A DNA stretch of 64,000 nt from Paragordius varius (taxonomy: Eukaryota; Animalia; Nematomorpha), in assembly GCA_964247055.1 (NCBI GenBank), contig OZ176051.1:5890001-5954000 (forward strand). Reading direction: 5' to 3'. Shown here piece after piece: positions 31,801 to 34,800 of the stretch. Under the pieces are notes generated by a model. That model made no database searches and was not told where the DNA came from. It saw nothing but the letters and a program-made list of their open reading frames with translations. The number at the start of each line of letters is the position of its first letter. The first letter of the stretch is position 1. A program made the translations under genes and the position numbers.

Positions 31801-34800
31801 AAATGTTTATATATATAACTATAAATTTTATAGGAAATCGTTAGGAATCTGTATTCTACTGGATTAACTCATTTTTTTGAAAATTTTTTTTGAATCTGAA
31901 ATAAATTAGACGTGCAAAATAAAAATACTAATACAAAGATTTTGCTCTTTAGATATGGGGTCTTTAGCGATGAAGATGAAGAAAATCAATTAGAATCTGA
32001 TCATGATACGACCTCACCATGGCTATCCTCAAAACAACAATCAAGTTTACATTTTTCTTTATAAATAACCCGTTTTCTATGAATAAATTTATTCCATTAA
32101 TTTGAATATTTTTCTCATTAATATATTTTATATAATTGCTTTGACTTAAAGATAGTTTTTTTTACAATTAAACAATATAGTTTATTTGTCATACTAATTT
32201 ATAGATACCATGTTTTTGCATGGTAGTATTTTAGAATAATAGCGCAATATTCTTTTTTAGTCTGACATCTTTTGTAGAAATTTAACACTTATATTTATCT
32301 AAAATTTATTTTAAATATTTTTGTCTTTTCGTTTCAGAAAAGCAAATCAATCTTAGCGAAGAAGACAACACTTCCGACTCCGATATCGGCTATAATAAAC
32401 GGCTAAGCAATAAAAGACAACAAATTCAACAACGAATTAAACCTAAACGTACCATACAAACCAACAAAAAAATTTGGTAACAATTAAGATAATTTACAGT
32501 AAATCAAAGACAAAAATATTTTTAATACAGGGATACTTTTTTAAACGTTATTTTTTTTCTTTATTCCCTAAATGATTACAACTGTAAAATGTATAGTTGA
32601 GTCTATTACTAATTTTTTGGCAAATCAAAACGGGACATCATAATTAAAATAATCACGGTATAAAAAATATGGCTGTATCTTTATGTAAAGATGTTTTTCT
32701 TTTTGATTTTATTTTTTACTGTTGTAGTTTAGCATAAAAATGATACATTTCCATATCGGAATCAATCGTTTTAAATATCTAAAATAAACCTAATCTGACC
32801 TTTTCAAACCATAAATATAATGTATATAGTTATAAAGAAGATGAAAGTGGAGATGATGAATATATTATGCAACAAGCTTCAAATGATAAGCTTTCCAACA
32901 AAATGAAATCAATTAAAACGGAAAAAAATTTAGACGAACGAGATGGCGACAGTAATAACCAGGAGGATAATTTTGAAGATGATGGCGTTGATCAAGAAAT
33001 TCCTGCCCCACACATTTATGCCAAAACTATTGATAAAGTATTGGCACGACGATATTTTATTCAGGGAGGTATGTCTGCCAGTTTTACTTAAGTTTTTGTT
33101 TTATACTTAAATACTACTAAGGTTAAAGGTTTTTTTTTGAAAAAAGTTAGTTTATGTGCACGTATTTTGGGTATATTTTGGCTGTGCCGCTTTTTAAAGG
33201 TATCTATGGGGATTTTCCACAATTCCATTAAAACTTTTGGGGTATTGATTTCTTTGGCAGAAACATTTAAAATAATTTTGGAACATTGTATGAAACCGGA
33301 GTTTTAATAAAAAAACCTTGAAATCAACTGTAAATTAAAGTTGTATAAGTTTTTCGTATTTTAGCAAATAATTTATGACAAATCTAAAAATTTGATAATT
33401 GTGCAATTTTTCTTGACTTTTTTTCGTCTAGTTGAACAATCAGAGGATTATAAACCAAAAAAGCATACCCATTTGGGAGAATGGAAATATTTAATAAAGT
33501 GGCAAACTCGATCCCATTTACATAATACGTGGGAATTCGAGGCCGAACTCAAAAACCAAGACATTGGTGGTATGAAAAAGTTGGAAAATTTCATTAAAAA
33601 CGAAAAAGATTTGGATAAATGGTAAAATTTTTAATTAAATTAGCTTTTCCATTTTTTTCCTAAAATATAATTATGTCATTGATATAGGATTCATCTGATT
33701 TCGATGATATTTCTAGGATTTTTATGTCGGAAACATACCTATGTTTTTCAATATCTTAGCTATTTTTTTAATTATATTCTTATTTGAGTCATATTGTCAA
33801 ACTCTTGCTTCGGTTTTTCATAATACAAAGAATAGTTGGATTAATTCTCTAAACTTTTATAGTCCTATTTTATTATTATTTGATTAAAAATTAGATATAT
33901 TTTTGTTAAATTTATTGTTTAGGAAACATCAAGCATCAGTTGAAGATTTAGACTATTTCTATTGTCAAAAAGAATTGAATGACGATTTACTTAAACAATA
34001 TTGCATATTGGAACGGATTATTGGTACATTACTTTTTTCAGTTTTACATTTTAGGTCTTTTTACCTTATTTCGATTTTATTTAAATAACTTATAAATTTT
34101 TTAGCCCACAGAATAATTGAGAAAGAAATTCCAAATCCTGAACAAAGTAACAGTGATAGCTCTGAATCGATTAAAGTTAAATCCGAAGTTAATGATTCAA
34201 TGGAAGTTGAAGAATCAATCAAGAATTTGGGTAAATGTACATATTTTTACATACATATCATAAATTATATTTCAATTAATTTTATATTCCAATTAAGTTT
34301 TTCATTTTTGCAATTTTTTTGTTATTTTAAAAGAGTGTTTTAATCGATTATTATGTTTATTGTAATATAATGTGGAACATGTACAGTTATTCTCAAATTA
34401 AATAGACTCATTTTTTTTCAAAAGGGATAATTTTACATTATGAATTAATTTTATTGAAATTATAATTTATAAAACCATTTTTTAAAAATTTAAGATCAAT
34501 CCACTGAAACGAATCTGAATATAAACAACAATAATCATGATGGCAGAGATATGACAGGAGAAATCTCTCAAAATACAACTAATACAACTTTTAAGGTGAA
34601 TACAGTTTATTTTTGGTTTTTTGCGCATAATATTTAATACAGTGGAACTTCCCTCATAAACCCCGATTGTTGGAAAATACATGGCTTATCCGCATGACCC
34701 TTTTTGCAATAAATTTACATTTTTTAAAATTAATTTTACAAATAATTATTACTAATAAAATGATTATTTTGATACTTAAAATGTTTAACCAAAAACGATG

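What the first reader, a model, noticed from the sequence alone, without database searches (positions are those of the whole stretch)
33490..33535. Animal CHD1 that appears to have lost the H3K4me aromatic cage
Seen: chromodomain 1 reads [16 protein letters not shown], with CGA (Arg) at 33509-33511. Established: human CHD1 reads [16 protein letters not shown], where W322 and W325 cage methylated H3K4; budding yeast Chd1 has a non-aromatic residue at the second position and does not bind H3K4me. The flanks align without gaps and TGG to CGA needs two base changes, so a sequencing error is unlikely. Inference: this remodeller is uncoupled from H3K4me3, or even repels the methyl-lysine, which is unusual for a metazoan CHD1.
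Basis: partly seen in the sequence, partly recalled or inferred. Interest (0 to 1): 0.7.

Follow-up and report, generated by a model that had tools for sequence, protein, structure and literature searches.

The report
Hairworm CHD1 lacks one cage tryptophan
An intact CHD1 chromatin-remodeller gene, probably from a horsehair worm, has arginine where human CHD1 has one of the two tryptophans that grip methylated histone H3K4; this is rare in animals but other invertebrate sequences found here show similar losses, so it is a modest finding.

Summary
Exon 33432-33621 (+) encodes CHD1 chromodomain 1. It reads ...[20 protein letters not shown]... and aligns to human CHD1 without gaps. CGA (Arg) at 33509-33511 sits at human W325. 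The equivalents of W322 (first chromodomain) and W413 (second chromodomain) are kept.

The gene is a complete CHD1, confirmed exon by exon: two chromodomains, the SNF2 ATPase, the SANT-SLIDE DNA-binding part and the C-terminal CHCT domain.

Trp is present in every named animal protein cluster where the motif was found (221, plus single fly, nematode and flatworm clusters). The change is not unique, though. Unnamed fragments that look like mites, a snail and a nematode carry Arg, Lys or Leu at this position. A Myxobolus (myxozoan) protein carries Gln. A choanoflagellate and fungi are also non-aromatic there.

Two further changes lie at the same histone-binding groove. The conserved ten residues holding human Y295 are missing, and about 60-65 extra residues sit just before the D408 equivalent.

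Most likely this is a yeast-type CHD1. Methyl-lysine reading is lost or weakened, and the chromodomains are kept to regulate the ATPase. That is inferred from sequence only. I had no RNA, no binding data, no view of the rest of the genome and no read-level check of the codon.

The genome is probably a horsehair worm (Nematomorpha).

The parts
30706..47018 (+). Approximate span of the CHD1 gene (acidic/Ser-rich N-terminal exons through the CHCT exons); more than 25 exons
   Evidence: Three-frame reading. tblastn of full-length CHD1 proteins gives 10-16 colinear pieces, best to a tick CHD1 at 1169 bits. Exon ends coincide with those of another intron-rich animal CHD1 locus, L008.
33011..33068 (+). 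End of the exon encoding the first strand of chromodomain 1 (...[19 protein letters not shown], plus the first base of the next codon); donor GTATGT at 33069
   Evidence: Sequence read. Corresponds to human ETIERFMDCRIGRKG in the alignment.
33432..33621 (+). Chromodomain 1 exon: (V)[62 protein letters not shown](W)
   Evidence: Acceptor tcgtctag|TT, donor TG|GTAAAA.
33500..33502 (+). TGG, equivalent of human W322 (first cage residue), kept
33509..33511 (+). CGA = Arg at the position of human W325 (second cage residue; Glu in yeast Chd1)
33923..34023 (+). Exon for the helical linker between the chromodomains: (W)[33 protein letters not shown]
   Evidence: As conserved as among the reference animals (ratio 0.96).
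34105..34230 (+). Extra exon 1 in the first loop of chromodomain 2: (A)[41 protein letters not shown]. It starts with the conserved 'AH'; the rest has no counterpart in other CHD1s
   Evidence: Read. The splice phases fit only if this exon and the next are included. No Pfam match. No RNA evidence.
34495..34595 (+). Extra exon 2 in the same loop: (D)[33 protein letters not shown]
   Evidence: Read. Needed to keep the reading frame into the next exon. No Pfam match.
34963..35112 (+). Chromodomain 2 exon: [23 protein letters not shown]... It keeps the W413 equivalent (TGG 34984-34986). Human D408 and D425 are both Glu here
   Evidence: Pfam Chromo, E 1.6e-12. Positions derived from the human alignment. 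Residue roles.
36449..39754 (+). SNF2 ATPase exons (both lobes)
   Evidence: Pfam SNF2-rel_dom and Helicase_C on separate exons. 58-94% identity to reference animals.
43953..45232 (+). Exons of the SANT-SLIDE DNA-binding region
   Evidence: Pfam CDH1_2_SANT_HL1 (E 1e-13) and HTH_CHD1_Hrp3 (E 5e-18).
46533..47018 (+). Exons of the C-terminal CHCT domain: [16 protein letters not shown]... and ...[25 protein letters not shown]
   Evidence: Pfam CHD1-like_C, E 1.2e-7. Reading.

Best explanation
This is the CHD1 orthologue of an AT-rich ecdysozoan, probably a horsehair worm. It is intact and under purifying selection. Its tandem chromodomains have lost the second of the two tryptophans that hold the methyl-ammonium group of H3K4me3 in human CHD1 (and stack on the neighbouring arginine of bound peptides). 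Two further changes lie at the same peptide groove. The ten-residue piece carrying human Y295 is absent, and about 60-65 low-complexity residues are inserted just before the D408 equivalent. The most likely consequence is a yeast-type CHD1. Methyl-lysine reading by the chromodomains is lost or strongly weakened. The chromodomains are kept for their other role, in which the linker helix gates the ATPase and the pair contacts nucleosomal DNA. The enzyme would then reach transcribed genes through its CHCT domain and the elongation machinery. Shown here: the sequence, the alignment, the domain set and the distribution among relatives. Inferred: the loss of binding and the route of recruitment.
For: Gapless alignment puts Arg at W325 and keeps W322. 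The cage is formed by W322 and W325, W325 gives the cation-pi contact to an inhibitor's amine that mimics the methyl-lysine, and Y295, D408 and D425 contact that inhibitor. W322, W325 and W413 are described as critical for H3K4me binding, the fly triple Trp-to-Ala mutant loses H3K4me3 binding, and yeast Chd1 does not bind H3K4me; yeast has Glu at this position. The conserved 'ATGxxTTxY' piece is missing between the two chromodomain-1 exons, and extra exons lie in the chromodomain-2 loop. The gene is otherwise complete: Chromo x2, SNF2, Helicase_C, SANT_HL1, HTH_CHD1, CHCT. The chromodomain exons are only mildly more diverged than the ATPase exons (ratio 0.81 against 0.85-1.01) and the linker is fully conserved (0.96), so the domains are still in use. 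Fly cage mutants localise normally but have lower assembly activity. In yeast the CHCT-Rtf1 contact controls Chd1 distribution (abstract of PMC12390759). Recurrent replacement of this Trp in other animal-like CHD1s shows the residue is dispensable in some lineages.
Against: There are no binding data. One cage Trp, W413 and both acidic groove residues remain, so weak or altered tail binding is possible. Fly chromodomains bound H3 peptides regardless of methylation in one study, so the human model may not transfer. No RNA confirms the exon model, including the two extra exons and the missing ten residues. The codon was not covered by the contigs shown. A paralogue with an intact cage may exist elsewhere in the genome.
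Confidence: 0.65

Rival explanations
1. The pocket is re-purposed rather than lost. With Arg beside the remaining Trp, the altered groove binds another ligand, for example an unmethylated or acidic/phosphorylated peptide or nucleic acid, or still binds methyl-lysine weakly.
For: W322, W413 and the two acidic groove residues (as Glu) are kept. The chromodomain exons remain conserved. Three changes cluster at one surface. The human pocket also accepts non-histone ligands such as LSD1-K114me2 and influenza NS1.
Against: No positive evidence exists for any new ligand. The inserted residues are low-complexity and match no family, which looks like relaxed constraint. Other lineages put R, K, Q, L or E at this position, so no particular chemistry seems to be selected.
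Confidence: 0.15
2. The organism still has a canonical H3K4me3-reading CHD1/CHD2 paralogue elsewhere, so this gene is a diverged duplicate and nothing is lost at the level of the organism.
For: Vertebrates have CHD1 and CHD2. Only this 64-kb window could be searched. Notes on this genome mention only this gene and a CHD7-like gene, which does not amount to a genome search.
Against: The named invertebrate rows show isoforms of a single CHD1/2-type protein per species, though this was not counted formally. This gene has the full CHD1 architecture including CHCT and sits on conserved ancestral intron positions, as expected of the orthologue. There is no second chromodomain-1 exon in the window.
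Confidence: 0.15
3. Artefact: a sequencing or assembly error, or a decaying pseudogene.
For: The codon was not covered by the contigs listed. No RNA run holds the gene.
Against: Two base changes are needed. All exons examined are open, in phase and conserved across about 16 kb. Flanking residues also differ (KG to QT), as expected of real divergence. The source run holds 89% of the sampled words of the stretch.
Confidence: 0.03

Closest known systems
Human CHD1 tandem chromodomains (PDB 2B2W, 5AFW, 9T9F)
   Same: Same gene family and architecture. Chromodomain 1 aligns without gaps, 50% identical over 54 residues. W322 and W413 are kept, and D408 and D425 are kept as acidic residues.
   Different: W325 is Arg. 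The piece holding Y295 is absent. About 60-65 extra residues lie in the chromodomain-2 loop before D408. Binding of H3K4me3 is therefore doubtful.
Saccharomyces cerevisiae Chd1 (PDB 2H1E, 3MWY, 5O9G)
   Same: Non-aromatic residue at the second cage position. Reported not to bind H3K4me. The chromodomains serve ATPase regulation and nucleosome contact. A CHCT domain is present.
   Different: Yeast has Glu (acidic) and this gene has Arg (basic). This protein is otherwise of the animal type by best matches.
Drosophila CHD1 (W372/W375/W462)
   Same: An invertebrate CHD1 in which mutation of the cage does not prevent chromatin localisation but lowers enzymatic activity. It is a functional precedent for an animal living with a disabled cage.
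   Different: The fly wild type keeps all three Trp. The loss there was engineered, not natural.
Other natural animal-like CHD1s without the second Trp, found here: P0031/L004-L006, P0027 and P0012 (arachnid-like); P0011 (mollusc-like); P0067 (nematode-like); P0017; Myxobolus squamalis P0132
   Same: R, K or Q at the same aligned position in otherwise typical CHD1 chromodomains. P0031 was seen in assemblies of three samples.
   Different: They are not close relatives of the window gene (39-50% identity in chromodomain 1). P0011, P0012, P0027, P0031 and P0067 keep the 'TTxY' piece that the window lacks. All but Myxobolus are unnamed metagenome or assembly fragments whose origin is inferred from best matches only.

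Membership tests
CHD1/CHD2 subfamily of SNF2 remodellers | Two chromodomains directly N-terminal to the ATPase | tested here: met
   Pfam Chromo on exon 33432-33621 (E 9.5e-7) and on exon 34963-35112 (E 1.6e-12), followed by SNF2 exons.
CHD1/CHD2 subfamily of SNF2 remodellers | SNF2-type ATPase with both lobes | tested here: met
   SNF2-rel_dom (E 2e-16 and 3e-21) and Helicase_C (E 2.4e-13) on separate exons.
CHD1/CHD2 subfamily of SNF2 remodellers | CHD1-type SANT-SLIDE DNA-binding region | tested here: met
   CDH1_2_SANT_HL1 (E 1e-13) and HTH_CHD1_Hrp3 (E 5e-18).
CHD1/CHD2 subfamily of SNF2 remodellers | C-terminal CHCT domain (PF13907) | tested here: met
   CHD1-like_C, E 1.2e-7, above the curated cut-off.
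Human-type H3K4me3-reading CHD1 | First cage Trp (W322) | tested here: met
   TGG at 33500-33502; alignment.
Human-type H3K4me3-reading CHD1 | Second cage Trp (W325) or another aromatic residue | tested here: not met
   CGA = Arg at 33509-33511.
Human-type H3K4me3-reading CHD1 | Chromodomain-2 Trp (W413) and the acidic groove residues D408 and D425 | tested here: met
   [18 protein letters not shown]: W kept, D408 to E, D425 to E.
Human-type H3K4me3-reading CHD1 | Chromodomain-1 insert carrying Y295 (the 'GATGxxTTxY' piece) | tested here: not met
   Absent from the alignment. The only alternative model, a 24-nt micro-intron plus a 36-nt micro-exon, gives Val at that position and is contradicted by a 2-nt indel between haplotypes.
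Human-type H3K4me3-reading CHD1 | Selective binding of H3K4me2/3 peptide | not testable with these tools
   Needs recombinant protein and a binding assay.
Yeast-type CHD1 without methyl-lysine reading | Non-aromatic residue at the second cage position in an otherwise intact double chromodomain | tested here: met
   Arg here and Glu in yeast 2H1E. Linker helix conserved.

The most novel reading that the evidence does not exclude
Reading of H3K4me3 by CHD1 is dispensable in animals and has been lost independently several times in fast-evolving invertebrate lineages: a hairworm, mites, a gastropod, a nematode-like lineage and a myxozoan. In the hairworm the whole peptide groove has been rebuilt (Arg in the cage, loss of the Y295 piece, a 60-65-residue loop insertion), possibly for a new ligand.
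Probability: 0.3. Interest if true: 0.5.

Novelty: new member of a known kind. Interest (0 to 1): 0.3.

Why it matters
How much CHD1's chromodomain binding of H3K4me3 matters in living cells is still debated. Human CHD1 binds the mark, yeast Chd1 does not, and fly cage mutants still find their genes. Natural animal CHD1s without the second cage tryptophan would show that an animal can do without this reading. They would also provide ready-made natural variants for testing what the double chromodomain is conserved for. The practical value is modest. It is one residue, the consequence is inferred, and the same loss appears in several other invertebrate sequences.

Tried and rejected
1. The metagenome scan with the chromodomain-1 exon gave one locus, and it was a chance match.
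2. Exact look-ups of the NECAP open reading frame and of the Gordionus epimerase fragment P0295 found nothing. I therefore could not reach the CHD1 of the nearest known relative through conserved gene order.
3. Rfam found nothing in the window.
4. A paper search for accession GCA_008849205 / VSKX01 found nothing, so the Arg-bearing locus L001 remains unnamed.
5. The first CHD1 word search, with a crinoid query, was swamped by vertebrates. The second, with a tick query, added arachnids, a centipede and molluscs.
6. The epimerase search used for taxonomy gave only 38-48% identities across bilaterians. Its tree puts the window next to Gordionus, but on long branches.
7. I considered a nematode of the Meloidogyne type, a rotifer, a louse, a dicyemid and a myxozoan as the source. 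I dropped them for lack of close hits and because the window's other genes show no nematode-specific families.
8. I considered a missed micro-exon for the absent ten residues. It is possible on paper (24-nt GT-AG intron at 33069-33092, exon 33093-33128), but it has a weak donor, a hydrophobic and unlike sequence, and a 2-nt indel between haplotypes.
9. A weak chromodomain-like reading at 34631-34702 (E about 1) is treated as chance.
10. I did not fold the single exon, because it lacks the first strand and would not show ligand binding.

Full report
**The sequence.** The window is 73.5% A+T. On the + strand, TAT TTA ATA AAG TGG CAA ACT CGA TCC CAT TTA CAT AAT ACG TGG GAA begins at 33488 and reads [16 protein letters not shown], with CGA at 33509-33511. 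The exon runs from 33432 (acceptor ...tcgtctag) to 33621 (donor TG|GTAAAA). Its first codon is completed by G at 33068, where the upstream exon ends at a GTATGT donor. Pfam calls the exon a chromodomain. phmmer against all PDB chains aligns it without gaps to human CHD1, E about 1e-12. In the human protein the motif starts at residue 318. The window therefore keeps W322 and has Arg at W325. Yeast Chd1 has Glu there.

**The gene.** Three-frame reading and tblastn with full-length CHD1 proteins give a colinear series of more than 25 exons from about 30.7 to 47.0 kb. Searched exon by exon, Pfam finds a second chromodomain (34963-35112), SNF2-rel_dom, Helicase_C, CDH1_2_SANT_HL1, HTH_CHD1_Hrp3 and the C-terminal CHCT domain. 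Exon ends coincide with those of another intron-rich animal CHD1 locus (L008). No other chromodomain-1 exon lies in the window. This is a complete CHD1, not a fragment or an obvious pseudogene.

**Other changes at the same surface.** Papers name W322 and W325 as the cage, W413 as also critical, and Y295, D408 and D425 as ligand contacts. The window keeps W413 and has Glu at both acidic positions (EYLCKW...STWEE).
- In the alignment, the conserved 'GATGxxTTxY' piece that carries Y295 is missing. That piece is present from human to nematode and flatworm, and in four of the Arg/Lys-bearing fragments described below (P0011, P0012, P0027, P0031). In the window, FIQG joins directly to VEQSEDYK.
- Other agents report 21-26-nt introns in this genome, so I tested a micro-exon model: a 24-nt GT-AG intron at 33069-33092 and an exon at 33093-33128. 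It is formally possible. However, it gives [12 protein letters not shown], it needs a GTTTTT donor, and it is hit by a 2-nt indel between the two haplotypes. I prefer the deletion. Under either model the Tyr is not conserved.
- Between ERIIAH and EYLCKW, where human CHD1 has about 12 residues and the tick about 16, two extra in-phase exons (34105-34230 and 34495-34595) add about 60-65 Ser/Asn/Glu-rich residues that match no family.

**Selection.** Each exon was added separately to an alignment of seven animal CHD1s. The two chromodomain exons are somewhat more diverged than expected (identity ratio 0.81). The piece before chromodomain 1 is more so (0.53). The inter-domain linker (0.96) and the ATPase exons (0.85-1.01) are as conserved as among the reference animals. 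The chromodomains are still constrained.

**How unusual is it?**
- Named animals keep Trp. In the two word searches, all 221 named or unnamed clusters in which the motif was found have Trp: echinoderms, vertebrates including man, ticks, spiders, a scorpion, oribatid and Varroa mites, a centipede and five molluscs. So do a fly, Strongyloides, a monogenean, amphioxus and Saccoglossus.
- The exhaustive search of 50%-identity representatives with the exon gave 144 hits carrying the motif: W 106, Y 10, R 11, K 10, L 4, Q 3.
- The named non-aromatic hits are a choanoflagellate (R), Corallochytrium (K), fungi (K), a heterolobosean (K) and one animal, Myxobolus squamalis (Q).
- Several unnamed hits look like animals. 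P0031 (Arg) lies on metagenome contigs from three samples, and the CHD1 on those contigs matches a tick protein best, at 60% over 1254 residues. P0031, P0027 (Arg) and P0012 (Lys) match a scorpion and oribatid mites best. P0011 (AGG = Arg) is 77% identical to Biomphalaria. P0067 (Arg) matches Strongyloides best. P0142 (Leu) matches Varroa and tick best. P0017 (Arg) lies in the intron-containing NCBI assembly GCA_008849205.1.
- None of these is close to the window gene.
- The loss is therefore rare but recurrent in invertebrates. I found no paper reporting it.

**The organism.** The upstream gene is a heparan-sulfate C5-epimerase. Its best hits are only 38-48% identical and spread across bilaterians, with Gordionus (Nematomorpha) first. 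A maximum-likelihood tree pairs it with Gordionus (99/98 support), but both branches are long. The Gordionus montsenyensis genome has 26.93% G+C, against 26.6% here. Other agents of this scan independently call this genome a horsehair worm. I accept that as probable, not proven. The source run shows two haplotypes at about 200x each that differ by roughly 10% in the introns.

**Reads.** The listed contigs stop at 33457 and resume at 33594, and depth between them is low. The codon itself was therefore not independently confirmed. No RNA run holds the stretch.

**Mechanism.** The best reading is a yeast-type CHD1. The cage is disabled by Arg, which is positively charged like the methyl-lysine it would face. 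The groove is altered in two more places. The chromodomains persist because their linker gates the ATPase and because they contact the nucleosome. This is established for yeast and supported by fly data, where cage mutants localise normally but assemble nucleosomes less well. Recruitment would rest on the retained CHCT domain, which in yeast binds Rtf1 (abstract). All of this is inference from sequence. Re-purposing of the pocket and a canonical paralogue elsewhere remain open.

All searches were made exon by exon, by reference.

**Verdict.** Interest is modest.

Noticed in passing
window 35928-36163: A 236-nt almost perfectly palindromic element (arms 35928-36021 and 36071-36163, 89-93% complementary) inside a CHD1 intron. 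Summed contig depth there is about 8e5 in the source run, against about 400 for the flanks. That suggests a foldback MITE with roughly two thousand copies in the genome. It is also abundant in the three other runs.
   Followed up: partly
window 34105-34230 and 34495-34595: Two extra in-phase exons add about 60-65 low-complexity residues to the first loop of chromodomain 2.
   Followed up: partly
window 33069-33128: A 24-nt GT...AG segment directly after the exon end, followed by a 36-nt open stretch. Together they could form a micro-intron plus micro-exon of the kind reported elsewhere in this genome. A weak donor and a 2-nt haplotype indel at 33099 speak against it.
   Followed up: partly
window 32700-36700 (run X1): The source run holds two haplotypes at equal depth (about 200x each). 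In the two intron stretches where both haplotypes' contigs were listed, they differ by about 10% plus many indels. Near-identical pieces at 2-6x depth occur in runs labelled as three other organisms, as expected if a parasite's DNA is present in host samples.
   Followed up: no
L004 6001-10864 (also L005, L006): A compact, nearly intron-free CHD1 of an arachnid-like animal from metagenomes. It has Arg at the W325 position, Phe at the W413 position (EYLCKFEGLPYSDCTYE), and only a 20-nt gap between the two chromodomain reading frames.
   Followed up: partly
L009 114-425 (P0011): A mollusc-like chromodomain-1 exon, 77% identical to Biomphalaria, reading [16 protein letters not shown] with AGG for Arg. 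It sits on a single 523-nt metagenome contig, so it is unconfirmed.
   Followed up: no
window 12302-13470 (-), 14940-15431 (+), 52874-53401 (+): Open reading frames that may be transposon-derived. Only the first part of the first has a Pfam match, a Spin-doc-type zinc finger (12964-13470). By eye only, the first two resemble hAT/GTF2IRD2-like transposases and the third a reverse-transcriptase fragment.
   Followed up: partly
window 17023-17586 (-), 27027-28139 (+), 55130-55570 (-): Neighbouring genes: a single-exon NECAP (DUF1681, E 2e-52), the C-terminal exon of glucuronyl C5-epimerase (E 2e-56), and a UDP-glucose:glycoprotein glucosyltransferase exon at 55130-55570 (Glyco_transf_24, E 2e-35). 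ORFs up to 60241 (-) looked by eye like more of that gene, but the one scanned (59804-60241) had no Pfam match.
   Followed up: partly
window 34631-34702 (+): An intronic open frame, [20 protein letters not shown], faintly resembles a chromodomain core (tblastn E about 1). It is probably chance, or conceivably a decayed exon copy.
   Followed up: no
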